In this document: in pieces, positions 10,079-64,000 of the stretch | Position numbering within the stretch: position 1 is the first letter of the stretch | How the letters are laid out: every line of letters starts with the position of its first letter | Virus record (IMG/VR): IMGVR_UViG_3300044680_000280 | Coordinates: 62,001 to 126,000 of that record | DNA length: 64,000 nucleotides | Strand: one strand, 5' to 3' | Made by a program: the position numbers and the translations under genes | Notes under the pieces: model-generated | Seen by the model: the letters and a program-made list of their open reading frames with translations, nothing else | Database searches by the model: none | Told to the model about the DNA's origin: nothing

Positions 10079-10098
10079 GTCAGATCAACCTTTCTAGG

Positions 10099-24742: not shown

Positions 24743-24769
24743 CCTTGAGAAGAAAAAAGGAGATTACCG

Positions 24770-50200: not shown

Positions 50201-50766
50201 TTCTCGGCCCACTTACCCGTAACTTTGCCGGAAGACATCATCGCGGCAATGGCTTGAGCTGCGCTTTTGGCACTGCTCTTAAAGTCCTTACTGAATAGTT
50301 CTGTCCCGGCTTCAAAGAGATTTCGACCAGCCGTCGCTCCGTGCTTTCCAAGTTTGACAACGTCCCTGTGGGCTTCCATCCCACGACCGTGCTTGACCTT
50401 GAATTCTCGAAGTGCTTGCTTCTTCAACTCCTTGGTCTTGTCGATACGATCTTGAAGGACCTTCTTTTCATCCTCGCTCGCCTCGAGCATCCTCTTGGAA
50501 TCACGAGCAATGTGCGCATTGTAAGCTGATAGAACCTTACCGTATTCCTTATAGGCTTTCTTGGCATCCCCAATGCCAAACGTCATCTTATTAATACCGG
50601 CCAGGGCGAACTTCTGGACATTCTGTCCAAGAGCGCGCATGCCCTTCGAAACGGCGCTGGCGGCTCGAGCACCGCTGTCTCGAAACTTCTTGAGAGCTTG
50701 CTGGGCTTGGTCTACATTTAGGTTTAGACCTACCTCAAAGATATCCTTGTCCTTAGTGGGCATCAC
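47236..50766 (-). CDS. Tape measure protein (1176 aa)
   Basis: Long Ala/Lys/Gly-rich helical ORF after the chaperones, with a hydrophobic segment and C-terminal ASGGTV...AARPGEKIIP typical of TMPs; Pro-rich linker near the C-terminus. Confidence 0.85.
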   Translation of the reverse strand: MMPTKDKDIFEVGLNLNVDQAQQALKKFRDSGARAASAVSKGMRALGQNVQKFALAGINKMTFGIGDAKKAYKEYGKVLSAYNAHIARDSKRMLEASEDEKKVLQDRIDKTKELKKQALREFKVKHGRGMEAHRDVVKLGKHGATAGRNLFEAGTELFSKDFKSSAKSAAQAIAAMMSSGKVTGKWAEKAGKGFWDKAKKRYGRSGEKFASGNKVGGLAEGALALGNTGLAGLSKGLGGILKMLGAMGPLLSVASGIFAGIVKLMVDAEAAAKEMNKKILEVSGSSNAFYRNNQKSGAALADMDDMLRKIRDDAASMDNIKWGISKEDHIAVLNAMSAEGVQLGELAKQYKKTGDAAKDAAGEAAIFGDAVHVAVAYSREFGVSLQEISSFQGEMMTEMGQSLDSVTKTFHMMTKGASESGIASNKFFAIIRGVSADLNLYNTRIEDAAHLLTVLGKVMSPRNAQKFLSASMGAVKNMGRVERIKVAMLAGAGKTGGVVDRDIKRGTDNLAEKMASMGKGSADQYREAIEKGGEDFTKALEDLPENMRGEIREAQLEIGVKRKMRAGKGAVGTAFAAGESGPAGQLQVLTDALKGFNGGKSLLDGINTLGEQFMAENLGISIDQLNQMAKFEVAMKDQRDVLKKTLREDKTQAKLTKAGIKLTGNDADDQKAIDQAGFDQIMDTLDEGDKEALQGAKTEMDYAKQTAQFTSSASDKLQVLIDWLMNKLWDVMSDIYDAVADIASWIIKDPTRELTKLQLKATKTGNSAIQEVVDKAKSLDDVRKGLFELARNKGQEKAMYQGTDKQRDDFAKSISDNVSKSELTSAFSKAVGATGLDEKKGQSVERNLLKGNGFADSLKKAGLTSDEEAKILDKIRMFLTTPDLMKVIAAGTSIATDDAKPTGQEQASIDAGGPTAPPDPVAPSATAPVPPAPPPAVPPPTKGVVKSVDNFADTLSQIGMSLPPPPAPTAMAGAPAVSPAHAAAVAKAKAPDTMTQDQGEAILGSLDGLSDTLSQNGIKINRSFLRNQFWKNGHDAVLDANREALLEYFLYSKMDPADVAKGLQAGNFDATTFGQGVLSGATATGTIAMPTKDQPTTKLPGMASGGTVPEPKSPDQVFVAARPGEKIIPKGQQGGGPLSLTIPISVNGPGGQELGNMMRAAAMNVVLEWQRKHKFT

Positions 50767-52028
50767 GGCCTCCTAACGCTGAAAGGAGGGCTCTGGGGCG
50801 TCCTAGCGGGCGTGATAGGCCTAGCCGTCGACGGGTCCTGGTCGGTCGTTCCCACCCGGGTCTCAATCTCCTCAAAGTCAGATCTCACCGCTCTCGATTG
50901 GGGAGGTAGTTTCTTAGCTTGAGCTTCTGCCACTTGGACTTGAAATTGACGGCGGCGAATCATTGCATCCCGTACCTCGGCCGGAGTCAAGCCCGACATA
51001 TCTGTGCCGCCAATAAGTGACTTCCCGCCGAACTCGATCTCCCGCTGAGCGTGCAGTTCTTTTACCTGCTCTTCCTTGGCTTTTTGCGCGTCTTTCATGC
51101 GGTTTTCGTAAGTGTCAACGACGACGTCGTGCCAATCCTTCTCTCCCCGAAGGTCACTCTGCAATTGCTGAGCTAGGTCTTCCACGGTTTGAGCGGTTAC
51201 CCAAACGGCACCAGCCTTGTGAAGAGCTTTATCATGCAAGGGCTCCCCGAGGAGAACGTGACGCAGAACGGCATCCTTTCTGGATAGCTGCTCAGTTCTC
51301 TCCTGCCGCCTGCGCTCCGAGTCCTTTGTGTAAACTTTCTGAATTTCCTTACCAGCACTGCAAGAACCGATGAACTTGGCATGCTCCCACTGCTGCTCAA
51401 GGATATCACGCAAGTCATCAATTCGATTAATCGCTCTCCAAGTGAGCTGACCCCAGTTCATTCCAAGTTGGTCAGTTCCGGCAATTCCAGTGATAGAGGG
51501 GGACGTCATATCCGTATTCAGAACCTGCAACCATCGATACCTGGAGTATTTTTCAAGGGCATAACACTCCACCAGAGTGATCGCCTTTCGCGCCCGACGA
51601 TTAAGCTCACTCAAATAGCGAACAATCTTCATTTTGACGGACAAAATGATTTCCCCGTACTCTTTCGTGAGGCGAGGGATCCACTGATTACGTTCAGGAA
51701 GAATGTTGATTCCACCAACCATAAAGGTGCTGTAAGCGATAAACTGGGACCAAAACCTCTTAGTCGGAGATCCCTTTTCGTCATACCCACCAGTCAAACG
51801 AATGAGCTCGTGCTCGTGGTGATTCAAGGTTTTGAAAACGAATTCGACGTCATTCACCTCACAGGACTGCGTGAGGAATCCGTGAAAAAGCAAGTCTTCG
51901 ACGTCCCGGTAAACCTCGGGGTTGACCTCTGGCTCTTTGGGAGCCTCCACAACGATCTTCTCACCTGCCTCCATTCTCTGGAGTTCGGCTTGCTGCTCGT
52001 CATAGGACGTGGGTAGCTTGTTTTTCAT
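50763..52028 (-). CDS. Tail assembly chaperone-like protein 2 (421 aa)
   Basis: Immediately precedes the TMP. N-terminal FLTQSCEVNDVEFVFKTLNHHE resembles the N-terminus of the upstream gene. Confidence 0.55.
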   Translation of the reverse strand: MKNKLPTSYDEQQAELQRMEAGEKIVVEAPKEPEVNPEVYRDVEDLLFHGFLTQSCEVNDVEFVFKTLNHHEHELIRLTGGYDEKGSPTKRFWSQFIAYSTFMVGGINILPERNQWIPRLTKEYGEIILSVKMKIVRYLSELNRRARKAITLVECYALEKYSRYRWLQVLNTDMTSPSITGIAGTDQLGMNWGQLTWRAINRIDDLRDILEQQWEHAKFIGSCSAGKEIQKVYTKDSERRRQERTEQLSRKDAVLRHVLLGEPLHDKALHKAGAVWVTAQTVEDLAQQLQSDLRGEKDWHDVVVDTYENRMKDAQKAKEEQVKELHAQREIEFGGKSLIGGTDMSGLTPAEVRDAMIRRRQFQVQVAEAQAKKLPPQSRAVRSDFEEIETRVGTTDQDPSTARPITPARTPQSPPFSVRRP

Positions 52029-52029
52029 C

Positions 52030-53166
52030 TCACCTCGGAGTAGGTCGGAACTTCGGATTCATTACACCTTGAGGTTTTTGCTCGAGTATTGAAGCCACGG
52101 CCCCGATATCCGTGTGACGAGTTCCCTGCTTGGTGAGTACCGGCTTAGCGGTCGGCACGTTCGGTTGAATCAAACTCTGCGGCACGTTGGGCGGGAGGGT
52201 CATCCCAGGCGGAAGAACCGCTTGTGGGGCGGGAGCTCGCATCTGATCGAGGTCCTCATCCATCACCCCTGGCTCTTGTCCCATGAGGGCCGCAATTTCC
52301 GCCGCACGCTTACTCACCGGAGTAGATTGTTCTTGAACCGGGGTGGGTGGTGGCGTAATGATCGGCGTCGATGGTGGGGTTCTAACAATCTCTGGCACGT
52401 TGACGACCTGCTGATTCAACGGAACCCTCTGGCGCATCAACTTAGCCGCCTCTCGAGCCGCCTCAGCACTAACGGTATTAGATGCCTGAACTGGCGGAGC
52501 AGTAGCCGGAGGTGGAGAGGCTGAAACCTCTTCTTGCTGAGGCTGAGGTTCTGCGATCGACTGATCCAGATCCTCTAGAGCCTTTTCATCTTGAGGTCTG
52601 GTAAATAGCGTGTACCCGTTCTCCTCCAGAATCATTTTCAGAATCTGAGGAGGTACTTCTTCCTCTATCTCCTTCATTTCACCAAGGAGACGTCGATACT
52701 TGTCCTCCGCAGTCTCTTCCGCAAGGACAAACGTGACCTTATCCTTCGCTTTGTTCTCCGCTTTGTGGACTACATCGCTGAACTTTCGGTACGCAACGAA
52801 GACGGCTTCTTTGCTCCAGGTCGAAAGGATATTTTTGAGAAGCCAATCGTGGAGCTCACGCTTGATCAGACGAAGGCGCGTCTTGTCCTTCGGATCGGGC
52901 TCCTCCACCTCGACGTAACTAACATCTCTTAGGTCGACGCCATTCAGCTCAACAATAGCTCGACACAAGTGGGCGAGTTGCCACTTGTTGAGGTACTTAA
53001 TGTCCTCAAAAGACTCCGTCTCATCGACGATGGACTCGTATTCGTCCGGTCGCAGATTCCTTAGAACGACTTCACAGTCGTCCAAAATGAATCCCTCTTC
53101 GACTTTACCTACGCCTTTGGCCTTGTCCAAAGACGACAGAAGTTGCTTTTGCGATATCGATCCCAT
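52030..53166 (-). CDS. Tail assembly chaperone-like protein 1 (378 aa, Pro-rich C-terminal half)
   Basis: Follows the tube gene; VVLRNLRPDEY...LCRAIVELNG; strong AAGGAG SD. Confidence 0.55.
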   Translation of the reverse strand: MGSISQKQLLSSLDKAKGVGKVEEGFILDDCEVVLRNLRPDEYESIVDETESFEDIKYLNKWQLAHLCRAIVELNGVDLRDVSYVEVEEPDPKDKTRLRLIKRELHDWLLKNILSTWSKEAVFVAYRKFSDVVHKAENKAKDKVTFVLAEETAEDKYRRLLGEMKEIEEEVPPQILKMILEENGYTLFTRPQDEKALEDLDQSIAEPQPQQEEVSASPPPATAPPVQASNTVSAEAAREAAKLMRQRVPLNQQVVNVPEIVRTPPSTPIITPPPTPVQEQSTPVSKRAAEIAALMGQEPGVMDEDLDQMRAPAPQAVLPPGMTLPPNVPQSLIQPNVPTAKPVLTKQGTRHTDIGAVASILEQKPQGVMNPKFRPTPR

Positions 53167-53187
53167 CCTTCGCTCCTTTTTAATGAG

Positions 53188-53333
53188 GACGCGTGAGGAT
53201 TGACGACGGGATACTTCGAAGGACGGAATCTAAATTTGGGTCCGTGTCTTACTGACGGAAAGCGGAACCGTGTACATTTGGTCTGATCTGATTCAATCCG
53301 TATCTACAAATCGCGTCGCCGCCTCAATGCGTC
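53188..53333 (-). promoter_or_regulatory. Candidate structured intergenic RNA between the tube and chaperone genes
   Basis: Nested complementary segments GACGC/GCGTC, TGAGG/CCTCA, GGCGACG/CGTCGTC, GATAC/GTATC and GAATC/GATTC, in the order needed for one long interrupted stem. Confidence 0.5.
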
Positions 53334-53335
53334 GA

Positions 53336-54085
53336 TTAGGCTCCCGGCGGAACCGTAGTAGCCGCCGCACTATTGCTCGCAAACCGCAGAGAAAACCCTG
53401 CGCCAGCCTGACCGTTGTCAGAAATGGGGGCGAGACCCGTGTCGATGAATTCACCGTACTGCGATACACCGTCGATGATGTCGGAAACCGTAACGCTCGC
53501 ATTTTCAGCGACCATCGCAGCATCTGAGGTGAACGACGCCGAGTAAGAGTTGAACCAGCAACCCTCGAAGTACGTGAAAAGCGCCTCAACCGCCAGAATG
53601 GGGGTCGCTGCTGGATTGAAGATGAACTGTTGACTCGGTTGCGTGCCGTAAGGCAGTGTCGCGGGCTGAGCATTTGGACCGGCGCCGACGTCTTGCTGGG
53701 TGCTGATCTCCGAAAAAACTAGCTCCTGCTTGATGTCGAAGGGCCAGCGGTGGTGCTTCAGGCTTCGAGCGATACCGTCGATCCCCGCCTTGTAGCCAAC
53801 CGTCTGAAAAACGTTCGCCGTATTCAGGAGAGTACGATTGAGGGTCATCGTCATCGGCTCGGTGATGGACGGCACGAGCTCGGCGATCTGATCACCAAAA
53901 CCTACGCCACGAGCCGCGTCGATCGTACGAGACTCGTCGGTCGAGAACTCGGAGATAACACCAACCTGAACGAATCCCTTGGCCCCTACGGCGTAGCCGT
54001 AAACCTTGTTCTTCTGGGAGATTGCGGACCGAACGTTCGGCGCCGTACCCATACGGTAAATGTAGTTTGTCGTGGTAACAGGCAT
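53336..54085 (-). CDS. Tail tube protein (249 aa)
   Basis: VGVISEFSTDESR...RGVG.GD..AELVP...MTLNRT and YFEGCWFNSYS...VAENASVTVSDI match myophage tube proteins; precedes chaperones and TMP. Confidence 0.8.
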   Translation of the reverse strand: MPVTTTNYIYRMGTAPNVRSAISQKNKVYGYAVGAKGFVQVGVISEFSTDESRTIDAARGVGFGDQIAELVPSITEPMTMTLNRTLLNTANVFQTVGYKAGIDGIARSLKHHRWPFDIKQELVFSEISTQQDVGAGPNAQPATLPYGTQPSQQFIFNPAATPILAVEALFTYFEGCWFNSYSASFTSDAAMVAENASVTVSDIIDGVSQYGEFIDTGLAPISDNGQAGAGFSLRFASNSAAATTVPPGA

Positions 54086-54103
54086 GGCTTACTCCCGGTC
54101 TCC

Positions 54104-55084
54104 TCAGACCTTCGCAGAAGCGAAGAGATTGTGAATCTGCTTGGCACTATCATCGAGTGCAGTCAGGTCCTTACGAACCCAGGATTGTGCGAGATCGACA
54201 CTGTTGAGAATCTCGCTCGTTCGCGACGCAATTGCGTAAAGGTCGCCCTGAGCCTTTGCCGCGTTGAACTTGCGTCCCGCCGTGACAAGAGCCTCGACCT
54301 TGGTGTTGGTCGACTCGACCGTATCGAGAATCCCCTGAGCAAGCTCGGTGTTCGCTTTGAGAATTTCGTATGACGGAGACTGCGTCGACGCCGACTTCGT
54401 TCCAGGAGCGTATACCGGAGTCGTCGAAGGCTCGGGAGCCATGACGGGGGTTGTCGACGGCTTGGGGGCGAAAACGGGCGTCGTAGAAACGTCCGCAACT
54501 TCAACCTTCGTACCGAGAGCACTCGCGTGAGTCGCGCTCGAGGGAAGGCTCTGATTGCCCTCCACCGTATCGACCTTGGGGGCGCTATCGATGTACCAAG
54601 CGTCGTTCTTGCTCTGATCGCCAGGGTTGTAAAAGTGCAGTCCAGCCGCCAAGGATCGCAGCCCCTCGTGCAGCTTGGGAGCGATGAGACCCTCGTCTTT
54701 GGCATACTTGTCGAGACGAGTAACCGTCTGCTCGAGTTGACCCAAACGCTCCAAAAGTGTTTTCTGAGACATGGTGATTGACCCTTCCGCCTTCGCAGAG
54801 ATTCGATTTCCCTCGTCAATAAGAGGACTAACAAGTAAAGGCTTAGCGGCCCACCGTGTTCTGGTAGGAGCCATAAGCTCTTCCATAATGTCGATGTCAG
54901 CCGTAATAACGCAGGATCCAAACGCGTTAAAAGCGTCCAAAGCACCACGAACCTCCCTTTTGGGGGCTACTTTGGTGACAAACTTGAGTACCGAGATGGT
55001 ACCCAGGATCTTGCGATGTCCATTGGGAAATCGGACATAATCACGGAGACCGTCTGTCTCCAACGTGACAAGGATTTTCCGCAT
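54104..55084 (-). CDS. Hypothetical protein (326 aa) with three STTPVxAP repeats
   Basis: Intact ORF; STTPVFAPKP/STTPVMAPEP/STTPVYAPGT; helical C-terminus. Confidence 0.7.
   Translation of the reverse strand: MRKILVTLETDGLRDYVRFPNGHRKILGTISVLKFVTKVAPKREVRGALDAFNAFGSCVITADIDIMEELMAPTRTRWAAKPLLVSPLIDEGNRISAKAEGSITMSQKTLLERLGQLEQTVTRLDKYAKDEGLIAPKLHEGLRSLAAGLHFYNPGDQSKNDAWYIDSAPKVDTVEGNQSLPSSATHASALGTKVEVADVSTTPVFAPKPSTTPVMAPEPSTTPVYAPGTKSASTQSPSYEILKANTELAQGILDTVESTNTKVEALVTAGRKFNAAKAQGDLYAIASRTSEILNSVDLAQSWVRKDLTALDDSAKQIHNLFASAKV
54398..54487 (-). repeat. 3 x 30-nt coding tandem repeat
   Basis: Encodes STTPVxAPxx three times. Confidence 0.85.
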
Positions 55085-55117
55085 GGTCTCTCTTGGAGAG
55101 ACCTAACGAAAGGAAAC

Positions 55118-55318
55118 TCAGTCCTCTTCGTCGTACCAGTCGGCGTCCAGGTCGAACTTCATCTCCATGTCATCCGGAGGCGGGCACGGAATGGTCGGAA
55201 CCTTTGAGGTCGGGGGCTCCACCAGCTCAAATTCATCCGGGGACAGGTAGGGGACGCTCCGGGGACGGGGGCGCACTTCCGTATACTCAAAATCCTCGTA
55301 TGACATGGCGAGCGACAT
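55118..55318 (-). CDS. Small acidic, Pro-rich protein (66 aa)
   Basis: Starts 3 nt after the upstream stop and fills the gap; ends DADWYDEED. Confidence 0.6.
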   Translation of the reverse strand: MSLAMSYEDFEYTEVRPRPRSVPYLSPDEFELVEPPTSKVPTIPCPPPDDMEMKFDLDADWYDEED

Positions 55319-55321
55319 AAC

Positions 55322-56230
55322 TCACACCCTCAAAAGAACTTCGAGAACGTCGTCTACAGAGAGAACGGTACCACCCCAGGGAGAGTATAGCCACAACTCT
55401 TCGGCAATCCACCGTTTCGGATTGCCCGCGGCAGTTTCCACCTCAGAGAGGATAGCCGCTGCTTTACTCAAGTCAAACCGCACGTACATGCTTTTGCGAG
55501 AGGCCGTCATGTGACGAAGACCCGTTTCTGGTTCATCGTCCTTCTCAGGCTCGTGTTCAGCGGTTGAGGTATACAAAAGACCTCTTAGGTAGCCTTGTTC
55601 ATACAGACGCGTCCACCCGGTGAACATTTGCCGAAATAGGGGTTTGGGGGTCGCAGCCACCACAAAGCCGTTAGACCCGACCGTCTTGATTTGAGGTTGG
55701 GGAATGTGAAACGGGGGTACCTTCGTCCCCCCGTGAGTGAAGTCGTGCACCCACTCAACGGCGACCGTCAGACGCTTCGCCCGCTCGTTCTCTCGAATGT
55801 ACTCCTTTGGTCGAACGAACTCGTCGAGGGCCAGAACGAGGTTGCGAACCTCTGGCTCAATGTGCGCTAGACCCTGGGCACCTAGTCGGTGAGCAAAGTC
55901 GACCTGAGAAACGATCTTCAAAAAAGATGGGTGTGTAAGTAGGTCCCGGTGCAGAAAAAGAGCAACCGCCACGACCACATCCACATTCAAAAACCGCGTC
56001 ATGAACTTCGTCGGCATCGGACGACCGAGCATGACGTCCTGATAAAAACTCCAAAGGGCTCCGGGGTCCGTTGCCGAAAATTCCGCGCCATGGTGCTCGT
56101 AGGCGTATAGGGTCGGGTCCGCCGCCTGCGCCCTCGTCAAACCTGTCTTGAAGCTGATGGCTCCAGGAAACAACCCCCTGTTATCGGGGTTCACGGAGAC
56201 TTCGAGCGGAATGTTGGACGTACCCATCAT
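55322..56230 (-). CDS. Hypothetical protein (~302 aa), possibly a degenerate DHH/MYG1-like phosphoesterase
   Basis: Start moved to ATG 56230 to avoid overlap with the 128-aa gene. YEHHG is followed by LNVDVVVAVAL and a later VD. Confidence 0.5.
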   Translation of the reverse strand: MMGTSNIPLEVSVNPDNRGLFPGAISFKTGLTRAQAADPTLYAYEHHGAEFSATDPGALWSFYQDVMLGRPMPTKFMTRFLNVDVVVAVALFLHRDLLTHPSFLKIVSQVDFAHRLGAQGLAHIEPEVRNLVLALDEFVRPKEYIRENERAKRLTVAVEWVHDFTHGGTKVPPFHIPQPQIKTVGSNGFVVAATPKPLFRQMFTGWTRLYEQGYLRGLLYTSTAEHEPEKDDEPETGLRHMTASRKSMYVRFDLSKAAAILSEVETAAGNPKRWIAEELWLYSPWGGTVLSVDDVLEVLLRV

Positions 56231-56246
56231 TGAGAAGGTACACCGA

Positions 56247-56633
56247 CTACTTAGGCTCCCAGGAGACGAATCTTCCGCTCTCGATGTCATCCTGCTTGAA
56301 GTCGTAGTCCTCCATGCAGTCCTCGATCCGTTCACGAAGGGAGTCCCGCCACCCCTGCGTCCGCTTGACAATGGGGGCCTTACCAGGCTTGAGGGGCTTC
56401 CCTTTGGCAAAGGAGTAGAGCTGCACTCGAATGGCGTCCTCGCCGACGCCCGCACCAGAGGTTCCGCGCTCGGAAATGGACGTCCAAACTCGCACGCCTG
56501 CGTTTTGGGAGAGGAACAGGTCCAGGACGACCTCCCCTCGAATCGCGCTCTTCCGTGGGTGCAGCGCATGAAACGCCCGATGAATGTAGGTCTCCATCTC
56601 GGAAAGAGTGACCTCTGTGTAGGTCGCGGCCAT
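56247..56633 (-). CDS. Hypothetical protein (128 aa)
   Basis: ATG overlaps the helicase stop (TAATG) with AGGAGG upstream; VRVWTSI...GEDAIRV...VKRTQGWR. Confidence 0.75.
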   Translation of the reverse strand: MAATYTEVTLSEMETYIHRAFHALHPRKSAIRGEVVLDLFLSQNAGVRVWTSISERGTSGAGVGEDAIRVQLYSFAKGKPLKPGKAPIVKRTQGWRDSLRERIEDCMEDYDFKQDDIESGRFVSWEPK

Positions 56634-59600
56634 TACACGTTCCTCCTGTCGTAGGTTGTAGGAGCGGCCCAAACGGGAAGCGCAAGGTCCTCCTCCGTGG
56701 CACTGGCGTGACTGAAGAATTGAGCGAGAACGGTCTTTACCTCTGCCTCGGGTGTCGTCTCAGGGGTGGGATCGTTCTTTCCCGCAACGTTCTGTCCCGT
56801 TGTCAACCCAGCTTGAGCCACGAACGGGGAGATCCCAGCTTGCCGACCGTAAACGCTCTTACGTGGGCAGACGATGGTGAGGTTCTTTGCGGCTCGAGTC
56901 ATGGCCACGTAGGCCAGTTGGCGTTCCGTTTTGTACTCTTCTTCCCGTTCCTTTCGAAGAGCCTCCTGAACCTCGGGAGGCAGCTCGGCCTCCAAGGGGT
57001 TTGGCTTTGGCTCGTACGGAAACACTCCCTTGGCCATGACGACCGACGTGTTGTTCCATTGGGCGCCCTTGACAGAGTGAATCGTTGAAAGAATGACACA
57101 GGGGGGTGCTCTTCGTTCACTCGGAGCCAACTTTAGCTGTTCATCGTCCCAAGTCTTGAGATCGACACGCAAGTCTTTCGCCGCAACAACGAGCTTGTCG
57201 ATGCGAGCCTTGAATTTCTTTGGATCGCTCGGGTCCGTCTCTGGATTGTCTGGGTCTGGTTGGGCGATCTGAAATAGGAAGGCGACGTTTCCCACAGGTT
57301 TCTTGGATTCGTCATCATCGGGATCAGGCGGGGCATCACCTTCTTCCTCGTGCTCGTTATTGAATGGCATGAGAACGTCACGAAGAGTTGGAGCGTCTGC
57401 GCCTTGACGCTCAGGAGCACCCTTAATATTGAGGATATCCCCGAAAAGGTCCTGGGTTGTGTACTTTTTTTGTTCGCCACCCCTACTCACAAGAATCCCT
57501 GAATCGACAGAGCTTCGTATGCCGTTGAGAGAACGACCTAAATTCTCGAGCTCCTCACCAGTCGCTCGTACTTTCCAGTTTTCCCATCGACGAGCTGGAT
57601 CCATCGCGTCCATGAAGTCATTGATTCCGTTACGGTCAAACAAATCGAGGGGATTCACGTTCGCCGTGGTCGTTCCAGACTTGCGGGCCCTCTTCTCAAC
57701 AACCTCACGAACAATCCGTTCCGACTCCCCAGCCTTCAAGAAAAAACGGTTGGGCTTGTTCAAAATCTCAATGAGAGACCGCTGCATTCGCTCGAAGTCC
57801 TGCCCGACTGCGAGATTGAAGTAGCTCATGACCGTAATGGTCTCGGGCGACTTCAAAAAGCTTGTACCGCCTTTGCGGGCGTATGGAATGCCCTGAATGA
57901 TGCAGGCCGTTTCGAAGTCGTTCTGCTCCATGTTGGTGCGAGTAAGCACGGCATAGTTTTCGATGGGTTCCCCAGCGTCCAAATCCTGCTTGATCTGACC
58001 AACGACGTTGAGCGCTCCGTTTGCGTGCGTTGCGGGCTCCTGAACAACAATAGACGCCTGCCCTCGCGGTTTAGATGGGTCAGGACGGGCTTCGATACGA
58101 ACTGCCGTTTCATGGTGCTCCATGAGCTGATTGGCATGGTCCACGATTTCAGGCAGACAACGGTAATTGGTCTTGATCGACTTGACCTTCCAACCTGGCT
58201 TGCCGTGAAACTGATTGAAGAGCTCGGGACGCGCCCCCACGAAGCGGTTGATCGATTGTTTTGGGTCGCCCACGAGCCATTCGGACTTACCATCCGAGCC
58301 GTCGCCGATTTTCTCGCACATCATGTCGATGATCTGATGTTGAACCGTATTAAGGTCCTGGGCTTCATCAACGATAACGTGGTCGAACATCGCTTGGATC
58401 TTCGCTCGAACCTTCGGGTCTCTCTTCAAAAGGTCACGAAAGAGCAGAATCATATCGGAAAAGTCTCCGAGACGAGCTTTCCCATTATCGCGCCACTTGG
58501 CCAGAAATTCCCCCCATTGCCTGCTGGCTCTGGGGTTAGTCCTCACACACGGGGGAGACCAGTTCTTGTTGACGCCCTTAAAGCCTTGAGTCCAGGCGTA
58601 CCACTCAGCTTGAGCGGCCTCATCGGGTCCCTTTGCCGAAGCTTTAGCCTGTTCTGACGTAACGTCATTCATGATCCATGCTTGAACCACATTGCCTGTT
58701 TTGCGCGGCGGATCCTCATTTAAACATTCCTTCCAGATCCGAGACATGTACCCGAAAAACGCACCAGGAGATGGGGCACGACCCGCCCGATGTTCGTGAA
58801 ACCCAGACTTTTCCGAATCCTTTGGCATAAACCATGTGGAAAGAGTTGCCTTTTCCTCAGGAGTCCCGTTTTCCACAACAAACTTGCGAAACATCCCGTG
58901 CATCGTACCGACATGCATCTGATTAAGGATATTGTCCCCCACTCGAGCGGCAATACGCTCACGTAGCTCCCGAGCGGCCTTTTTGTTGAAACTAACGATG
59001 AATACGCGCGAAGGGTTCACCTTCTTTTCTTTGACCAAATAGGCGGCTCGAGCGGTCGCCGTCGTCGTCTTTCCAGATCCCGCGCCCGCATCCACGAGAA
59101 CCTTGCCGTCAGTCATTGCGGCGTCGAGCTGCTCGGGATCAAGACCTTTGAGAGACTCGGGAACGTTCTGTGCTTTTGCCGCCGCTACAGCCGCCGTCGC
59201 GATGCCCACCACCTCGGATCGGGTGGGAGGTATGTCTGGTGTCCCGCTGACCTCGAGCGCCTTTGCCGCCGCCACCGTGGCGTCCGCCTGAATGAGGCTC
59301 AGACGTTCTGTATGGGCCGCCTGCGCCTGGTGCCCCTCTTCACTCAGAGGCGGGCTGTTCGACTTCTTGGCGTGGTCTATGGCCAGCGCCGCCGTGTTGT
59401 CCTGCGTCGCCGTAGAGGCAGCGTCGACAGCATCCTGGAAAGATCCTGAACCCGCCGTCTTCGCCGCAATGTCGATCCACGCCCGAATGCGACCGTTCCG
59501 AACGTTGATAACTGAAAACTTGTCCAGGGCGATAGCGCCGTCGTCGAGACAGGACGACTGCATCGCCGTCTTGACCTCCTGAATGGCTTTGTTCGTCTTG

Positions 59601-59944
59601 AAGACCTTGCGGATGGTGTTTGCTCCTCCGCGCGAAAGTACTGTACGAAGTTGCAGGGCTTGGCGCGGGAGACCCGCTCGATTCGCCCCGAAGTGGAAAA
59701 CCTTCTCAAGCATTTTCCGCATGTTGTCCGTCGGCATGTGCTCAGACAGAAACGTGTGGAACTCGTCGCCCATCATGGAATTGAGCGTACGGATGAGCGC
59801 GACGCCCTTTTGGATGACGGGATCGGAAGGATCTTGGATACCCGTCTTTTCCTTGAGAGTTCGATAGTATGTATCGAAGGCGAGGATCAGTACGACCCAC
59901 TCCGCAACCTCGATCTCCTTGATATCCGCTACGGGCTCGTCCAT
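56633..59944 (-). CDS. Superfamily 1 DNA helicase, UvrD/Rep/PcrA family (1103 aa), with ~265-aa N-terminal extension
   Basis: Q motif LDPEQ, Walker A AGAGSGKT, Ia SFNKKAARELRER, Walker B VDEAQD, III GDPKQSI, IV NYR, V TIHSVKG, VI ERQLAYVAMTRA. Confidence 0.93.
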   Translation of the reverse strand: MDEPVADIKEIEVAEWVVLILAFDTYYRTLKEKTGIQDPSDPVIQKGVALIRTLNSMMGDEFHTFLSEHMPTDNMRKMLEKVFHFGANRAGLPRQALQLRTVLSRGGANTIRKVFKTNKAIQEVKTAMQSSCLDDGAIALDKFSVINVRNGRIRAWIDIAAKTAGSGSFQDAVDAASTATQDNTAALAIDHAKKSNSPPLSEEGHQAQAAHTERLSLIQADATVAAAKALEVSGTPDIPPTRSEVVGIATAAVAAAKAQNVPESLKGLDPEQLDAAMTDGKVLVDAGAGSGKTTTATARAAYLVKEKKVNPSRVFIVSFNKKAARELRERIAARVGDNILNQMHVGTMHGMFRKFVVENGTPEEKATLSTWFMPKDSEKSGFHEHRAGRAPSPGAFFGYMSRIWKECLNEDPPRKTGNVVQAWIMNDVTSEQAKASAKGPDEAAQAEWYAWTQGFKGVNKNWSPPCVRTNPRASRQWGEFLAKWRDNGKARLGDFSDMILLFRDLLKRDPKVRAKIQAMFDHVIVDEAQDLNTVQHQIIDMMCEKIGDGSDGKSEWLVGDPKQSINRFVGARPELFNQFHGKPGWKVKSIKTNYRCLPEIVDHANQLMEHHETAVRIEARPDPSKPRGQASIVVQEPATHANGALNVVGQIKQDLDAGEPIENYAVLTRTNMEQNDFETACIIQGIPYARKGGTSFLKSPETITVMSYFNLAVGQDFERMQRSLIEILNKPNRFFLKAGESERIVREVVEKRARKSGTTTANVNPLDLFDRNGINDFMDAMDPARRWENWKVRATGEELENLGRSLNGIRSSVDSGILVSRGGEQKKYTTQDLFGDILNIKGAPERQGADAPTLRDVLMPFNNEHEEEGDAPPDPDDDESKKPVGNVAFLFQIAQPDPDNPETDPSDPKKFKARIDKLVVAAKDLRVDLKTWDDEQLKLAPSERRAPPCVILSTIHSVKGAQWNNTSVVMAKGVFPYEPKPNPLEAELPPEVQEALRKEREEEYKTERQLAYVAMTRAAKNLTIVCPRKSVYGRQAGISPFVAQAGLTTGQNVAGKNDPTPETTPEAEVKTVLAQFFSHASATEEDLALPVWAAPTTYDRRNV

Positions 59945-60010
59945 GGTTCTTCCTTACATTACCCCGCACAAGTGAAACCGGACGGTTTCTCTTACACCGT
60001 AGAGCTTGGC

Positions 60011-60976
60011 CTAAGAAGAGAATTTGTCGAGAACCGTTCCGTCTTTCGTGTACGCTTCTTCGAGGTTAGGGACCAGGTACTGAGAGCGCAACGTGGACGG
60101 CTCGTGCCCGACCGCGTCGGACGTCTCATCCAACGCTTTCAAGAACTCCTTTTTCAGGAGCTTTTCTCGCTCCTTCTTGTCTTCAGGGAGTTCCTTGCCC
60201 TTCGACCGGATCGCCTTGAGACGCTCCTGCATTTCCCGGTTCGCATGATACCCCCGGAGATCCTTTGCCGTAACGTCAAAATCCTTCAGATAGGCGTTGA
60301 CTTTCTCAGCCGTAGCCTTCGGAAGAAGTTCGGAATTCTCCCCTTTGGCCGCTTCGTACGCTTTCTTGAGGGCCTTTTTGATGCCGGCGTCCGTGACCTT
60401 TTTGTCGTGATCCACCCCGGACTTGCCGACGTACCTAATGGTCGCCCCACCCGAACCGAAGCTCACGTGCTTCTTGCGCCACCCGGTGACCCCAAAGTGC
60501 CCGTCCTTGGCGCTGTCGTCATTGCCAACCCGCTCATACGTATGGTCAATGAGGGCGACCGCCAGGGCCGTTTGAGCCGTGTCCTCATCGTCGGAGGATA
60601 GGTCGCTCTTGTACTTAGTACGGAGTTTACCGATACTCTTTTTAAGGGCATCGATTCGCTCAGCCTTCTTCTTGTCCCGATTGGCAATTTGACGGTCCGA
60701 ATACTCGTAGACGGTCATTTCATCACCGTCTTTGGTCTTGACCTTCTTCTTGGACTTGTAGCTAGCGGCCACCCGCTCCACCATTGCCTTGTTGTGTTTG
60801 AAGTACTCAACCTCAGAAAGCCGCTTCTCTGCCTCACCCTTCGAAGGATAACAGCCCCCATTCCAGTCTTTATTATTCGGAGACCGAACGCAGAACTCCC
60901 CCTTCTCTTTGACGATAATGGCTACACGTGTCGCCGCAGCAATACGCCATACGACTCGAGGAGTTAGAGAGTCCAC
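60011..60976 (-). CDS. DNA topoisomerase IB (bacterial/viral short type, 321 aa) with N-terminal accessory domain
   Basis: Catalytic set in order: ERVGN (Arg), YVGKSG (Lys), TAKDLR (Arg), VGH (His), RSQYL (Tyr nucleophile). Confidence 0.9.
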   Translation of the reverse strand: MDSLTPRVVWRIAAATRVAIIVKEKGEFCVRSPNNKDWNGGCYPSKGEAEKRLSEVEYFKHNKAMVERVAASYKSKKKVKTKDGDEMTVYEYSDRQIANRDKKKAERIDALKKSIGKLRTKYKSDLSSDDEDTAQTALAVALIDHTYERVGNDDSAKDGHFGVTGWRKKHVSFGSGGATIRYVGKSGVDHDKKVTDAGIKKALKKAYEAAKGENSELLPKATAEKVNAYLKDFDVTAKDLRGYHANREMQERLKAIRSKGKELPEDKKEREKLLKKEFLKALDETSDAVGHEPSTLRSQYLVPNLEEAYTKDGTVLDKFSS

Positions 60977-60999
60977 CCTAGTACGATCCGATAAGAACG

Positions 61000-61644
61000 T
61001 CAGTGTGAATCGTATTGGATACCCAAGTGCTCCCAGAGAGCCTCGAGCTCCAGAATCGTCATGTTTGAGGCCTTGCTCATGTTGTCCTTGAGCCAGCCGT
61101 AGAATGCGATGCCACCCTGCCGCCCTCGGGGCCAGTAATTGGTGTCCTGCCTGTAACCGTCCGCCGCTTTCCCCTCGGCATGAATGACAACACTGTTTGT
61201 CACGCGAAAATCACGGGGACTCGCATGAATACTGACAATAGTGTCATCAGGAAACTTCTTTTCGAGATCAATCGTCGTGCCCGCCGGCTCAACGTCAATC
61301 CCGCGCCTGGTTTGCTCACGAAGCTTGAAGAGATTCTCGTGCCCTGAGCGTGAGAGAATATCTTCCAAGTGCTTCTTCGCCTCGTCGTAGCTCATGTGAG
61401 AGATCGACGAAACTGCCTGCTTGACGATCTTGTCCGAAAGCTCGTCATTCAGAGTCTTCGGAATCAGAGTCAGCTCGCGAACTTTCTTGCCCCTCTTGCC
61501 AGCGTTCTGCATCTCCGTGATCTGAAGACTTCCGTGAAAGTGATGGAGCTTCAGATGTTCCGTAAAAGTGGATTTACCCACTTCCAACGCAACGATCCGG
61601 AGGGCAGCCGCTCGAGCTGCAACACGAAAGGCTAGGGGATTCAT
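61000..61644 (-). CDS. Hypothetical protein (214 aa) with N-terminal RVAARAAA motif
   Basis: Strong AAGGGAG SD; follows the sheath stop. Confidence 0.75.
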   Translation of the reverse strand: MNPLAFRVAARAAALRIVALEVGKSTFTEHLKLHHFHGSLQITEMQNAGKRGKKVRELTLIPKTLNDELSDKIVKQAVSSISHMSYDEAKKHLEDILSRSGHENLFKLREQTRRGIDVEPAGTTIDLEKKFPDDTIVSIHASPRDFRVTNSVVIHAEGKAADGYRQDTNYWPRGRQGGIAFYGWLKDNMSKASNMTILELEALWEHLGIQYDSH

Positions 61645-61667
61645 TTTAATCTCCCTTACCTACGATC

Positions 61668-64000
61668 TCAGAGGCTCGCCCTGAGGTTGAACGTGAGTAC
61701 GAGGTATAGAAGGGGGAAGATGGGCTGGTAGTACGCCTGGAAGTCCAGGGTGGTCGGATCGTTCGCGTCCACGTTGGCAGCGACGCCCGTGTAAGCCGCG
61801 ATGATTTCCGCCTGAATGAGACCCTTCAAGAGAGCGGTCATCGAGACGACGACTTCATTCGTTCGCGAGGCAAGGAACTTGGTGCCAACGAACGAGTCGA
61901 GAGCGCTTCGGCTTTGCTCTTGTGTGAAGTCGGAGATCTGAGTGACCGTCGGAAGACGGGTCAAAATCGACGTCATGTTCGTCGTCAGACCCTGGCGGAT
62001 TCGGAGGAATCCGTTACCCAGGTCGTCGAGGAGCGTGACGCCCGCGACTGCCGTCTGGTTTGCCGTGACGGGGTCGAGAGTTCGCTCGATGCTGGTAAAG
62101 CCCAGAATCTTGCGGTGCGTATAGGGAGTCGCCACGTCGATTGCTGGGGAGCAGGACGCTCCTGCAACCGCCGCCGCAAAGAAGGTTCCGTCCACGATGC
62201 TGTCGTAGGACTGGCCGGTCTCGTCGGTCAGGGTGATATCCGAGCTGTCGGGGTAGAGAGCCAGGATACGGTTCGAATTGAGGCTCTTGGCAACGGACTG
62301 AGCATTGCTTGGAGTGGTTCCCGAAGCGAATCCGATCATACCCATGCGCTCTGCTTGATTTCGAATGCTCGACTGAACTTCGCAGTGCTGCGTGAGGTAC
62401 GCAAACACTGAGGTGTCCGTCGCGAGCGGAACGATGACGTCGGGCTTGACATTGCCAGGAAGCGGGGTCGCGAGACCTTGAATCGCAGCGATGAAACTCG
62501 CATCCGACGCCTGGTTCGTGTTCGCGACGGTGAGAACCTGGTCGATACCAACGAGAACCGCACCGTTCTGGACCATCAGATAGAAGGCAAGGGAGACGCG
62601 GTTCTGCGGGCTGACCGCACCGAAGTTGGCCTCGACTGTCTTCTGCTGCTGGTAAAGACGAGTCGTGTAGTCCTGCTTCATGTACGTGTAGGACACGTAG
62701 TAGGAGTCACCAATCGAAGGCGCGACGCCCGAGGGGTCGAACGTTTGAACCGTACCTGTATCGTTCACTCCGACACCGACCGTGTTCGAAACCGTTGTCT
62801 CGAGACCGGGAATGGCGTACGTCGGAATCGACGAGGACACCTGGAAGGTTTCGCTTACGGTCAGGGTGAAGCTTCCAGCCGAGTCGTACGAGCCGCTCGA
62901 GGCTGGGAGAACTGTGAAGCGAAGTCCCGTGACTTCGTCAACATAGGTCTGACCAGGGTAACCGACGTTGTTCGTACCCGTACCCGTACCGCTCGCATTC
63001 GAGGAGGTGACGACGTAGTTGTTCGTGGCGTCTTCGCCGTTATCCCCATCCGTACCAGGCGTGAGCCCGATGTTCGTAGTGGGATTGAAGGCCGAATTAC
63101 CCGAGGTGACGAAGGCGATGCTAGAGGATGCCGCACCGACGGTCAAAGACTCGAACGTGATGTAGTTCAAGCCATTGAGCTGATCGACATAAGCGACCGC
63201 GCCGCTTACGAAGCCCGACGTGGCCATCAGCTCATCGACAACTTCGTAGGCGAAAACCTTCGTCTGCGTTGCCGTCTGATTGACGGTGAGTCCGAGAGTC
63301 GCGTTCGACGTGCCCGAACCGATGGAGATGATCGAGTTGGCGTTATTCGTGGGGCTCGTCAAACGGAGCTTGTTGACGTTTCCAAGAGTTCCCGCCGACG
63401 CAACACCCGAAAGGCCCGGAACCGTATTGATGAGCGTCACAAGGGTCGACGTGGTAACGGAAGTACCAGCCGTCAGGGTGATGGTGTACTGAACCCCATT
63501 GACCGTAATGATGAGCTGGTCGTTGACACCCGCCGTGATGTTGAACGGTCCCGCAACCGATCCGAGAATCGTAGCGGGCTTGTTGATCGCACCAGGGGTG
63601 CCGTTCGCCGACTGGAAGGTCGTGAATCCAAGAACCGTCTCAACGGTTCCCTGCTCAATCGTGATGTTCGACACACTATCGAAACCGCCGGGGAGAGCCG
63701 CCGGAGTCGAGTAGCTGAAGATGTGAAAGAGCACGTCTCCGCCCGAGATCTGCGATAGGCCGGCGAGATGGTTCGGCGCCGTACCCGAGAAGGTGGCGTT
63801 CGCATCGATTGCCGCGTTGATCGCAGCCACGATAGCCGTAGGGGTCAGACTTCCGATAGGGATCGGGGCTACGACCGCCGTGCCGTCAATGAGCAGGTTG
63901 AGGTAGGGGGCCACTTGGGCTGTCGTCGCCGAATTCGTTGTACCCGTGTAAGATGCACTGAGCGTAACGACCGTACCAACAACCGTGGAAACGGTGTACG
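61668..64000 (-). CDS. Tail sheath protein, partial (5' end beyond the window)
   Basis: C-terminal sheath core (ERMGMIG, DGTFFAAAVAG, TPYTHRKI.GF, RIRQGLTT, FVGTKF, YQPIFPLLY). The frame stays open upstream of 63914 to the window end. Confidence 0.88.
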   Translation of the reverse strand, partial: YTVSTVVGTVVTLSASYTGTTNSATTAQVAPYLNLLIDGTAVVAPIPIGSLTPTAIVAAINAAIDANATFSGTAPNHLAGLSQISGGDVLFHIFSYSTPAALPGGFDSVSNITIEQGTVETVLGFTTFQSANGTPGAINKPATILGSVAGPFNITAGVNDQLIITVNGVQYTITLTAGTSVTTSTLVTLINTVPGLSGVASAGTLGNVNKLRLTSPTNNANSIISIGSGTSNATLGLTVNQTATQTKVFAYEVVDELMATSGFVSGAVAYVDQLNGLNYITFESLTVGAASSSIAFVTSGNSAFNPTTNIGLTPGTDGDNGEDATNNYVVTSSNASGTGTGTNNVGYPGQTYVDEVTGLRFTVLPASSGSYDSAGSFTLTVSETFQVSSSIPTYAIPGLETTVSNTVGVGVNDTGTVQTFDPSGVAPSIGDSYYVSYTYMKQDYTTRLYQQQKTVEANFGAVSPQNRVSLAFYLMVQNGAVLVGIDQVLTVANTNQASDASFIAAIQGLATPLPGNVKPDVIVPLATDTSVFAYLTQHCEVQSSIRNQAERMGMIGFASGTTPSNAQSVAKSLNSNRILALYPDSSDITLTDETGQSYDSIVDGTFFAAAVAGASCSPAIDVATPYTHRKILGFTSIERTLDPVTANQTAVAGVTLLDDLGNGFLRIRQGLTTNMTSILTRLPTVTQISDFTQEQSRSALDSFVGTKFLASRTNEVVVSMTALLKGLIQAEIIAAYTGVAANVDANDPTTLDFQAYYQPIFPLLYLVLTFNLRASL

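What the first reader, a model, noticed from the sequence alone, without database searches (positions are those of the whole stretch)
54104..61644. Topoisomerase IB and SF1 helicase side by side between the sheath and tube genes
Seen: sheath and tube, normally adjacent, are separated by seven co-oriented genes including an intact TopIB directly upstream of a UvrD/PcrA-type helicase. Established: TopIB is uncommon in tailed phages, and poxviruses package TopIB in the virion to support early transcription. Inference: a late-expressed, possibly virion-packaged helicase-plus-swivel module for genome delivery, early transcription or packaging. More speculatively, TopIB strand transfer could contribute to the domain shuffling seen nearby.
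Basis: partly seen in the sequence, partly recalled or inferred. Interest (0 to 1): 0.68.

Follow-up and report, generated by a model that had tools for sequence, protein, structure and literature searches.

The report
Enzyme gene island between sheath and tube
In a roughly 400 kb phage from peat, seven enzyme and unknown genes sit between the tail sheath and tail tube genes: the helicase part is an old, conserved feature of this phage group, while the topoisomerase is a recent arrival found there only in this genome, so the two are not a conserved working pair.

Summary
A 1491-aa sheath gene (its C-terminal half lies in the window) and a 249-aa tube gene are separated by seven tightly packed genes on the same strand. 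These include an intact type IB topoisomerase directly upstream of an intact UvrD/PcrA-type helicase.

Across about 80 related huge-phage contigs the two enzymes have different histories. The helicase, a translationally coupled 128-aa gene (missed by simple ORF calling), a RecJ/NrnA-like DHH-fold protein and a 326-aa unknown form a conserved cassette at this position.

The topoisomerase and its upstream 214-aa gene occur here in no relative. In the closest relatives a terminator hairpin occupies their place.

Elsewhere in the clade this topoisomerase moves around. Of 56 distinct loci, 26 lie between portal and prohead protease, 11 between terminase and portal, 16 in a DNA-methylase module, and none is near tail genes. 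It is often one domain of giant multi-enzyme "polyvalent" proteins of 900-3098 aa.

A conserved helicase-plus-swivel module is therefore not supported. Late co-expression is plausible. Virion packaging of the topoisomerase has indirect family-level support but is untested. These are ordinary enzymes in an unusual, variable island.

The parts
61668..64000 (-). C-terminal 776 codons of the tail sheath gene. The whole gene is 1491 aa and continues beyond the window to the equivalent of 66143.
   Evidence: phrog_2839 tail sheath, 1e-24, on residues 1131-1486. tblastn hits annotated sheaths.
61000..61644 (-). p214, unknown function, private to this position. It carries the N-terminal motif M-x-x-L-x-x-R-V-A-x-R.
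   Evidence: No family hit. None of the 80 tail loci has it. It has 44 homologues elsewhere; in the two contexts inspected the homologue follows a Peptidase_C1 gene near deformylase and dCTP deaminase genes.
60011..60976 (-). Type IB topoisomerase, 321 aa, GTG start. Residues 1-65 are a separate N-terminal module; residues 66-320 are the TopIB domain.
   Evidence: PF01028 at 2.4e-28. Catalytic R-K-R-H-Y aligned to 2h7f and 2f4q. Belongs to clade A in the tree. The N-terminal 9-64 segment matches unrelated ORFs in two relatives.
56633..59944 (-). SF1 UvrD/PcrA-type helicase, 1103 aa, with a clade-specific 260-aa N-terminal domain and enlarged inserts.
   Evidence: PF00580, PF13361 and phrog_1967. 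PcrA 1pjr at 1e-36. Motifs are more than 90% conserved in 52 homologues. It is the only PF00580 hit in the genome.
56247..56633 (-). p128, a conserved small gene translationally coupled to the helicase (start overlaps the helicase stop by 1 nt). Function unknown.
   Evidence: tblastn with the gene that follows the helicase in at least 27 relatives: 46-64% identity, E down to 1e-63. Translation.
55322..56230 (-). DHH/DHHA1-fold protein, 302 aa (the longer ORF to 56569 is a false extension).
   Evidence: AF2 pLDDT 93. Foldseek hits are almost all DHH/DHHA1 proteins. VIA Z 10.5 to 8a8k, 9.4 to GdpP, 9.3 to GAN, 8.1 to RecJ. Homologues align only to residues ~115-400 of the long ORF.
55118..55318 (-). 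p66, a small acidic ORF. Weak evidence that it is a gene.
   Evidence: Small ORFs of 49-61 aa occupy the same slot in relatives. Weak tblastn match to L014, E 0.002.
54104..55084 (-). p326, conserved unknown immediately upstream of the tube gene. It has a conserved N-terminal 100 aa, a Pro/Thr-rich linker and a helical C-terminus.
   Evidence: Present in nearly all of the 80 relatives, at variable length of 194-563 aa. No fold or family lead.
53336..54085 (-). Tail tube protein, 249 aa.
   Evidence: hhalign to phage G gp179 at 94.9%. Atlas features match Phi812_tail_tube clusters. 45% identical to Tunturi_5 gp329, annotated 'virion structural protein'.

Best explanation
The interval between the sheath and tube genes in this clade of 200-530 kb soil and peat myophages is a long-standing accessory-gene island inside the late tail gene string.

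Its conserved core is a DNA-processing cassette: an SF1 UvrD/PcrA-type helicase with a clade-specific N-terminal domain, a translationally coupled 128-aa partner, a RecJ/NrnA-like DHH-fold protein, and p326. I infer that this cassette unwinds and trims phage DNA late in infection, for example by resolving or resecting replication and recombination intermediates before packaging. I do not think it is a tail part.

The rest of the island is variable cargo drawn from the phage's pool of DNA-conflict genes. In this one lineage an active TopIB and an upstream 214-aa gene were inserted exactly at the sheath|helicase junction, replacing the sheath terminator. They are therefore probably read through from the strongly expressed sheath gene.

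TopIB itself is a roaming gene in the clade, found mostly in the head and packaging module. It acts as an ATP-independent swivel on the very long genome. Its adjacency to the helicase here is a product of insertion history, not a conserved functional pairing.

Shown: the gene identities, the conservation pattern and the uniqueness of the insertion. Inferred: co-transcription, the cassette acting as a unit, and its substrate.
For: - The order sheath>helicase>(p128)>DHH-like>p326>tube>p378>p421>p1176 recurs in most of 80 loci, with helicase identity of 30-71%.
- A few relatives lack the helicase (L017, L018, L020, L060). Distant relatives (LR745208, Tunturi_5, L089) have only 0-2 other genes in the interval.
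- The interval ranges from 0.9 to 9.6 kb. Cargo in relatives includes Ros/MucR zinc-finger proteins, an HNH endonuclease, an ART-PolyVal protein, N6_N4 DNA methylases and a DnaJ-domain protein.
- TopIB and p214 are absent from all 80 tail loci. In L012 and L014 the sheath stop is followed by a terminator hairpin of -36 and -27 kcal/mol and then the helicase start.
- The genome also has a degenerate TopIB paralogue at the ancestral methylase-module site. In a relative, the active type sits next to that paralogue.
- Helicase motifs are conserved, and inteins interrupt the gene in some relatives, which suggests an enzyme the phage depends on.
- The DHH fold rests on a high-confidence model.
- Gene spacing is tight and the helicase and p128 genes overlap.
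Against: - There are no expression or proteome data, and no RNA run holds this DNA.
- The canonical DHH catalytic motif is not clearly kept in the DHH-like family, so it may bind nucleic acid rather than cut it, as Cdc45 does.
- The DHH-like gene is inverted in a subset of relatives, so the cassette is not always one operon.
- About half of the relatives have a terminator after the sheath gene, so the cassette may have its own regulation.
- Conserved position in a phage can be inheritance alone.
Confidence: 0.6

Rival explanations
1. First reader's model. Helicase and TopIB form one late-made, virion-packaged module that is injected with the DNA to support genome delivery or early transcription, as poxvirus TopIB does.
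For: - The genes lie inside the tail gene string and are tightly spaced.
- In 37 of 56 distinct loci TopIB sits in the terminase-portal-protease module. There it is often inside giant proteins with NTase, 2H, GNAT and InPase domains, or in the methylase module fused to LPD1 in G005. This is the architecture that Iyer et al. 2017 (PMC5512222) predict to be packaged and injected.
- An ART-PolyVal protein and DNA methylases occupy the same island in relatives.
Against: - The pairing occurs in 1 of about 90 genomes examined.
- The helicase is never fused to polyvalent domains; its long versions are explained by inteins.
- The window TopIB is a solo 321-aa protein, far from the portal.
- 16 of 56 TopIB loci lie among methylase and DHH genes, away from the virion modules examined.
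- No proteomics exists for this clade. The Tunturi paper reports none.
Confidence: 0.15
2. Anti-defence island. The interval collects counter-defence enzymes. The DHH-like protein degrades nucleotide second messengers or nanoRNA, the helicase strips or evades host nucleases, and methylases and ADP-ribosyltransferases protect DNA or modify host proteins. TopIB is one more such tool.
For: - The variable cargo consists of typical conflict domains: N6_N4 methylase, ART-PolyVal and HNH.
- DHH/DHHA1 relatives include the cyclic-dinucleotide phosphodiesterases GdpP, PggH and Rv2837c.
- In relatives TopIB neighbours a GT4-conflict glycosyltransferase and Dam methylase.
Against: - There is no specific match to any known anti-defence protein.
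- The PADLOC hits are generic UvrD/GajB similarity, with no GajA partner.
- The helicase-plus-RecJ-like combination is classically DNA repair and recombination.
Confidence: 0.15
3. Pure hitch-hiking. The interval is simply a permissive insertion site (a terminator-flanked gap after a major structural gene). The cargo genes have unrelated roles and their own timing, and there is no cassette-level function at all.
For: - Content and size are highly variable, HNH homing endonucleases are present, and the DHH-like gene is inverted in some relatives.
- p214 and TopIB both come from non-tail neighbourhoods.
Against: - The helicase/p128 start-stop overlap, and the persistence of helicase, p128, DHH-like and p326 together across sequence divergence down to 30% identity, argue for more than chance co-location.
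Confidence: 0.1

Closest known systems
Poxvirus/bacterial-type topoisomerase IB (vaccinia/variola TopIB, Deinococcus radiodurans TopIB), and the phage-specific TopIB noted in jumbo phages phiRSL1, Lu11, PaBG, Motura and NCTB (Iyer et al. 2021, PMC7824862)
   Same: It has the Pfam Topoisom_I catalytic core with the full R-K-R-H-Y pentad and a small size of about 255 aa for the core. It is encoded by a very large tailed phage.
   Different: Only about 25% identical to solved TopIBs (E 2e-7). It belongs to a large metagenomic clade of at least 567 proteins. It carries an extra 65-aa N-terminal module and a short RVAxxY motif. In relatives it is often one domain of 900-3098-aa proteins. Encapsidation, which is shown for vaccinia, is untested here.
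UvrD/PcrA/Rep SF1A helicases, including phage copies (Bacillus phage G gp299, SPO1-like pcrA)
   Same: All helicase motifs are present. The best solved matches are PcrA, UvrD and Rep.
   Different: It has a 260-aa clade-specific N-terminal domain, large inserts (about residues 353-494 and 747-950), and a fixed position between the sheath and tube genes. It is below 30% identical to any deposited phage helicase.
DHH/DHHA1 phosphoesterases (RecJ, archaeal GAN/RecJ2, Cdc45, NrnA, GdpP, PAP phosphatase)
   Same: It has the two-domain DHH-DHHA1 fold at Z 8-10.5. It lies next to a helicase, as RecJ-family proteins work with helicases (RecQ-RecJ, CMG with Cdc45, GINS-GAN; from established knowledge).
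   Different: There is no sequence-level Pfam hit. The canonical DHH motif is replaced by Y-x-H-H in only about 60% of members, so catalytic competence is uncertain.
Polyvalent proteins of phages (Iyer et al. 2017, PMC5512222)
   Same: In relatives TopIB is fused with NTase, 2H, GNAT, InPase and LPD1 domains. The giant TopIB fusions with NTase, 2H, GNAT and InPase domains lie directly downstream of the portal gene; the LPD1 fusion (G005) lies in the methylase module.
   Different: The window's TopIB is a solo protein in the tail string. TopIB is not among the domains that paper lists; the word appears only in a reference.

Membership tests
Type IB topoisomerase | Topoisom_I catalytic core above the Pfam gathering score | tested here: met
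   99.5 bits against a cut-off of 23.7. Genome-wide search gives 100.2 bits.
Type IB topoisomerase | Catalytic pentad Arg-Lys-Arg-His-Tyr | tested here: met
   ERVGN, VGKSG, DLRGY, VGHEPS and SQYLV align to R130, K167, R223, H265 and Y274 of variola/vaccinia TopIB. They are invariant in 28 homologues.
Type IB topoisomerase | ATP-independent relaxation of supercoils through a 3'-phosphotyrosyl intermediate | not testable with these tools
   Needs a plasmid relaxation assay.
SF1A UvrD/Rep/PcrA helicase | UvrD-helicase and UvrD_C domains above cut-off, with motifs I-VI | tested here: met
   161 and 89 bits. GAGSGKT, DEAQD, GDPKQSI, NYR, HSVKG and YVAMTRA are present and more than 90% conserved in the family.
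SF1A UvrD/Rep/PcrA helicase | 3'-5' translocation on ssDNA | not testable with these tools
   Biochemical.
Gabija GajB | A UvrD-like helicase encoded next to a GajA OLD-family nuclease | tested here: not met
   The PADLOC GajB models hit generically (6e-53), but no neighbour hits any PADLOC model.
DHH/DHHA1 phosphoesterase | Two-domain DHH + DHHA1 fold | tested here: met
   Model pLDDT 93. All 50 best VIA rows are DHH/DHHA1 proteins, Z up to 10.5.
DHH/DHHA1 phosphoesterase | Conserved DXD, D, DHH, D metal-binding motifs | tested here: inconclusive
   Y-x-H-H in 28 of 45, D65 in 40 of 45, D111 in 34 of 45, H123 in 44 of 45. The residues were not mapped onto a solved active site. No Pfam hit.
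Myophage tail tube | Homology to a known tube or virion protein encoded after the sheath gene | tested here: met
   hhalign 94.9%, E 4e-8 to phage G gp179. Atlas features score 0.96 to Phi812_tail_tube clusters.
Myophage tail tube | Tube beta-sandwich fold | tested here: inconclusive
   The AF2 model was unusable (pLDDT 38).
Myophage tail sheath | Sheath C-terminal domain | tested here: met
   phrog_2839 at 1e-24. tblastn hits 224 phage records with annotated sheaths.
Phage polyvalent protein (Iyer 2017) | Two or more effector domains in one polypeptide, encoded beside packaging or virion genes | tested here: not met
   The window TopIB is a solo 321-aa protein. The feature is met by relatives: L179 3098 aa, L194 2805 aa, L152 2130 aa and a 955-aa protein in G005.
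Phage polyvalent protein (Iyer 2017) | Packaged in the capsid and injected | not testable with these tools
   Needs virion proteomics.

The most novel reading that the evidence does not exclude
In this clade of huge soil phages TopIB is a virion-delivered effector. It usually rides as a domain of capsid-packaged polyvalent proteins encoded after the portal gene. The sheath-tube island would then be a second depot of late-made enzymes (TopIB here; an ADP-ribosyltransferase and methylases in relatives) that enter the host with the DNA. The shared N-terminal M-D-x-L-x-x-R-V-A-x-R-Y/F peptide would be a candidate incorporation or processing signal. This would be a bacterial-virus counterpart of the encapsidated poxvirus TopIB.
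Probability: 0.2. Interest if true: 0.75.

Novelty: new variant of a known kind. Interest (0 to 1): 0.45.

Why it matters
The result separates a real, conserved oddity from a one-off juxtaposition. The oddity is a helicase/RecJ-like cassette fixed between the sheath and tube genes across dozens of huge phage genomes. The juxtaposition is TopIB next to that helicase.

It also shows that a large, previously unannotated TopIB clade in huge soil phages is mostly embedded in head and packaging modules and in giant multi-enzyme proteins. That yields a concrete, testable prediction: a tailed phage may carry a swivelase in its particle, or use one at the packaging motor for genomes above 400 kb.

Neither enzyme type is new, and no function is demonstrated, so the value lies in guiding proteomics and biochemistry rather than in a new mechanism.

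Tried and rejected
- Nearest DNA matches: megablast of the region against 50,697 phage records found nothing.
- Tube structure: AF2 on 44 homologues gave pLDDT 38 and was unusable. The tube profile found nothing meaningful among PDB sequences and did not match Rhodococcus phage Finch gp43.
- p326: the ESM Atlas search gave nothing usable.
- p128: single-sequence and profile searches of PDB sequences found nothing.
- DHH-like profile: it did not match PDB sequences. It did not significantly match the genome's other DHH protein, although YEHHG aligned with LDHHK.
- Complex prediction: helicase residues 240-1103 with p128 gave no verdict (score 0.00). This is neither support nor evidence against binding.
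- Promoters and terminators: the sigma-70 and terminator consensus scans of 50000-64000 did not exceed the shuffled controls.
- RNA evidence: no RNA run holds the stretch.
- TopIB-mediated recombination: two CCCTT sites lie within 60 nt of the sheath|p214 junction against 0.3 expected. One is the complement of the ribosome-binding site and the other lies in sheath coding sequence. There are none at the TopIB|helicase junction. I rejected this as evidence.
- The N-terminal RVAxRY motif as a marker of island cargo: only 1 of 145 island proteins in relatives carries it. Rejected.
- An archaeal host, suggested by the Volactin hit: not pursued. The nearest cultured relative infects Acidobacteriota.
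- One anomaly: the Pfam scan of the 981-aa L005 TopIB fusion returned no family, although BLAST and PDB searches show the TopIB domain.


Full report
**Context.** The window is bases 62001-126000 of a 406,734-bp IMG/VR virus record, labelled provirus, with CheckV completeness of 85%. Every long ORF in the window lies on the minus strand. The same DNA occurs in peat metagenome runs. The nearest cultured relative by sheath and tube similarity is the 309-kb myophage Tunturi_5, which infects the acidobacterium Tunturiibacter. The nearest deposited relative is a 485-kb uncultured phage, LR745208. More than 80 related contigs of 200-530 kb exist in IMG/VR.

**Observation.** The gene ending at 61668 is 1491 aa long and runs beyond the window. 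Its last 356 residues are a tail-sheath domain (phrog_2839, 1e-24; tblastn to annotated sheaths).

The 249-aa gene at 53336-54085 has no Pfam or PHROG hit. A profile of 44 homologues matches Bacillus phage G gp179, the virion protein encoded right after that phage's sheath gene, at hhalign probability 94.9% and E 4e-8. Language-model features place it with Phi812_tail_tube clusters. I accept it as the tube, although its AF2 model failed.

Seven genes lie between sheath and tube:
- p214 (61000-61644);
- TopIB (60011-60976);
- helicase (56633-59944);
- p128 (56247-56633);
- a 302-aa DHH-fold protein (55322-56230);
- p66 (55118-55318);
- p326 (54104-55084).

Two gene calls needed correcting. The 415-aa ORF has an Arg/Ser/Pro-rich 113-residue front that no homologue shares. 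In another frame of that stretch lies a 128-aa gene that is 46-64% identical to the gene following the helicase in at least 27 relatives. Its ATG overlaps the helicase stop codon.

Spacers between the genes are -1 to 66 nt. Two long contigs from peat runs cover 56600-62500 without a single difference, and a small contig from a third sample bridges the sheath/p214 junction, so the arrangement is not an assembly artefact.

**The two enzymes are intact.** TopIB scores 99.5 bits on PF01028 and aligns all five catalytic residues to variola TopIB. The helicase has UvrD-helicase and UvrD_C domains, and all SF1 motifs align to PcrA. In 52 homologues these motifs are more than 90% conserved, and a 260-residue N-terminal domain is always present. 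The longer family members are explained by one to three inteins. It is the only UvrD-family gene in the record.

**Comparative anatomy of the interval.** I fetched 80 loci by the tube protein. Most show the order sheath, helicase (30-71% identity), the p128-family gene, the DHH-like gene, p326, tube, then p378, p421 and p1176. In one subset the DHH-like gene is inverted and sits ahead of the helicase. Four loci lack the helicase. The most distant relatives (L089, LR745208, Tunturi_5) have at most two other genes between sheath and tube.

The interval ranges from 0.9 to 9.6 kb. In relatives it carries extra cargo: Ros/MucR zinc-finger proteins (15 distinct), an HNH endonuclease just before the tube (6), an ART-PolyVal protein, N6_N4 DNA methylases and a DnaJ-domain protein. 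The interval is thus an old accessory island with a conserved core and a variable fringe.

**The DHH-like protein.** With 45 homologues AF2 gave pLDDT 93 and pTM 0.89. The strongest Foldseek hits and all 50 best VIA alignments are DHH/DHHA1 proteins: PAP phosphatase (Z 10.5), GdpP (9.4), the archaeal RecJ/Cdc45 homologue GAN (9.3), RecJ2, Cdc45 and RecJ (8.1). DHH phosphohydrolases of other large phages also match. The canonical DHH motif is not clearly kept, so nuclease activity is uncertain.

A helicase with a coupled small partner and a RecJ-like protein is the layout of a DNA unwinding-and-trimming unit. That reading is an inference. The one complex prediction I ran gave no verdict.

**TopIB and p214 are private to this genome at this site.** Neither has a hit in any of the 80 tail loci. 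In the closest relatives (tube 83% identical) the sheath stop is followed by a strong GC-rich hairpin with a U-rich tail, and then the helicase start. Of 47 distinct relatives, 26 have such a terminator-like element after the sheath gene. In the window the hairpin is gone: p214 starts 23 nt after the sheath stop behind a good ribosome-binding site, and only a weak hairpin follows TopIB. The likely consequence is read-through from the sheath gene into p214 and TopIB. This is inferred.

**Where TopIB normally lives.** The family is large: at least 567 proteins, many on contigs of 300-570 kb. By contrast only one of 50,697 deposited phage records holds a close relative. A census of 80 loci, reduced to 56 distinct at 90% identity, gives:
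- 26 between portal and prohead protease;
- 11 between large terminase and portal;
- 16 in a module with a DHH protein and Dam methylase;
- 3 unclear;
- none near sheath, helicase or tube.

In the post-portal class TopIB is often one domain of ORFs of 900-3098 aa. Three that I scanned combine it with a PolyA_pol-type nucleotidyltransferase, a 2H phosphoesterase, GNAT and InPase domains. A fourth case, in the methylase module, carries LPD1. These are hallmark domains of the polyvalent proteins that Iyer et al. (PMC5512222) predict to be packaged and injected. For the post-portal fusions the position is also the one those authors describe. That paper does not list TopIB among its domains. A later survey by the same group notes solo phage-type TopIB in several jumbo phages (PMC7824862).

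**Origin of the window copy.** The genome has a second, degenerate TopIB paralogue at genome position 9370-10104. In it the catalytic Arg loop is deleted, His is replaced by Leu and Tyr by Cys. It is orthologous to the only copy in the closest relative. In another relative the active type sits immediately upstream of this paralogue, beside a GT4-conflict glycosyltransferase and Dam methylase. The window copy groups with the active clade at no more than 61% identity to any copy in the tree (up to 85% to short metagenomic homologues). Its first 65 residues match unrelated ORFs elsewhere. In the two contexts I inspected, p214 homologues follow a papain-like peptidase gene near deformylase and dCTP deaminase genes. 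Both genes therefore moved into the junction from non-tail neighbourhoods.

**Verdict on the interpretation.** A conserved helicase-plus-swivel module is not supported, because the adjacency is unique. Late expression is plausible from gene packing and the lost terminator. Packaging of TopIB has indirect, family-level support only. Packaging of the helicase has none. I found nothing linking TopIB to domain shuffling.

**Novelty and score.** Both enzymes belong to known families, and TopIB in jumbo phages is already recorded. What is new at the level of a variant:
- a helicase/RecJ-like cassette fixed between the sheath and tube genes across a large clade;
- TopIB as a component of post-portal polyvalent-type proteins.

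I give this moderate interest.

Noticed in passing
window 60962-60976 and 61630-61644 (N-termini of TopIB and p214); also genome ORFs 22368-23249, 23251-24465, 24494-25213, 26571-26894, 44010-45323, 255962-257782, 277059-278258 and 389536-390075: A short N-terminal peptide, M-D-x-L-x-x-R-V-A-x-R-Y/F, heads at least a dozen otherwise unrelated proteins. A strict regex finds 21 sites against 5.7 +/- 2.5 in shuffles, and 9 of the 21 lie in the first 30 residues. The motif also directly precedes the TopIB domain in relatives, is repeated in tandem at the N-termini of p214 homologues, and occurs internally in the protein encoded after the portal. Its function is unknown; it could be a targeting or processing signal.
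   Followed up: partly
outside the window: genome 9370-10104 (L106:9370-10104, minus strand): A second TopIB paralogue of 244 aa has lost its active site (Arg loop deleted, His to Leu, Tyr to Cys). It is conserved in the closest relative, beside a GT4-conflict glycosyltransferase and DNA methylases.
   Followed up: partly
outside the window: genome 129924-130931 (L002:6924-7931, minus strand), three genes upstream of the sheath: A 335-aa protein matches the Pfam Volactin family (an archaeal actin-like protein) at 2.6e-72. It is conserved at 72-73% identity in relatives at the same position before the sheath. An actin-like gene inside the tail and neck gene string of a huge phage is unexplained.
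   Followed up: no
L179:340-9636, L194:1141-9558, L152:4192-10584, L100:9986-12853: Giant TopIB-containing proteins (955-3098 aa) combine TopIB with PolyA_pol NTase, 2H, GNAT, InPase and LPD1 domains, and one carries an intein. Three lie downstream of the portal in related phages; L100 lies in the methylase module. TopIB seems not to have been listed as a polyvalent-protein domain.
   Followed up: partly
window 61668-64000 and beyond (sheath residues about 660-960): The sheath has an N-terminal extension of about 1100 aa. One 80-residue segment of it recurs in at least eight other large proteins of the same genome (up to 56% identity), consistent with a shared decoration or Ig-like domain.
   Followed up: no
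L022, L033, L083 (helicase homologues): One to three inteins, some with LAGLIDADG endonuclease domains, interrupt the helicase gene in several relatives.
   Followed up: partly
L012:4054-4110, L014:4043-4100 and 24 other relatives: A strong terminator-like hairpin directly follows the sheath gene in about half of the relatives. Loop sequences differ between close relatives while the stem is kept. The hairpin is absent in the window.
   Followed up: yes
L082:9261-9989 and five similar loci: An HNH homing-type endonuclease gene sits immediately upstream of the tube gene in six relatives. This may help explain why the interval is so variable.
   Followed up: no
whole record: IMG/VR labels the record a provirus. 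However, it encodes large terminase, portal, prohead protease, sheath and tube, and the same TopIB and p214 proteins are on record from a 463,523-bp contig. It is probably a free huge phage whose record is incomplete.
   Followed up: no
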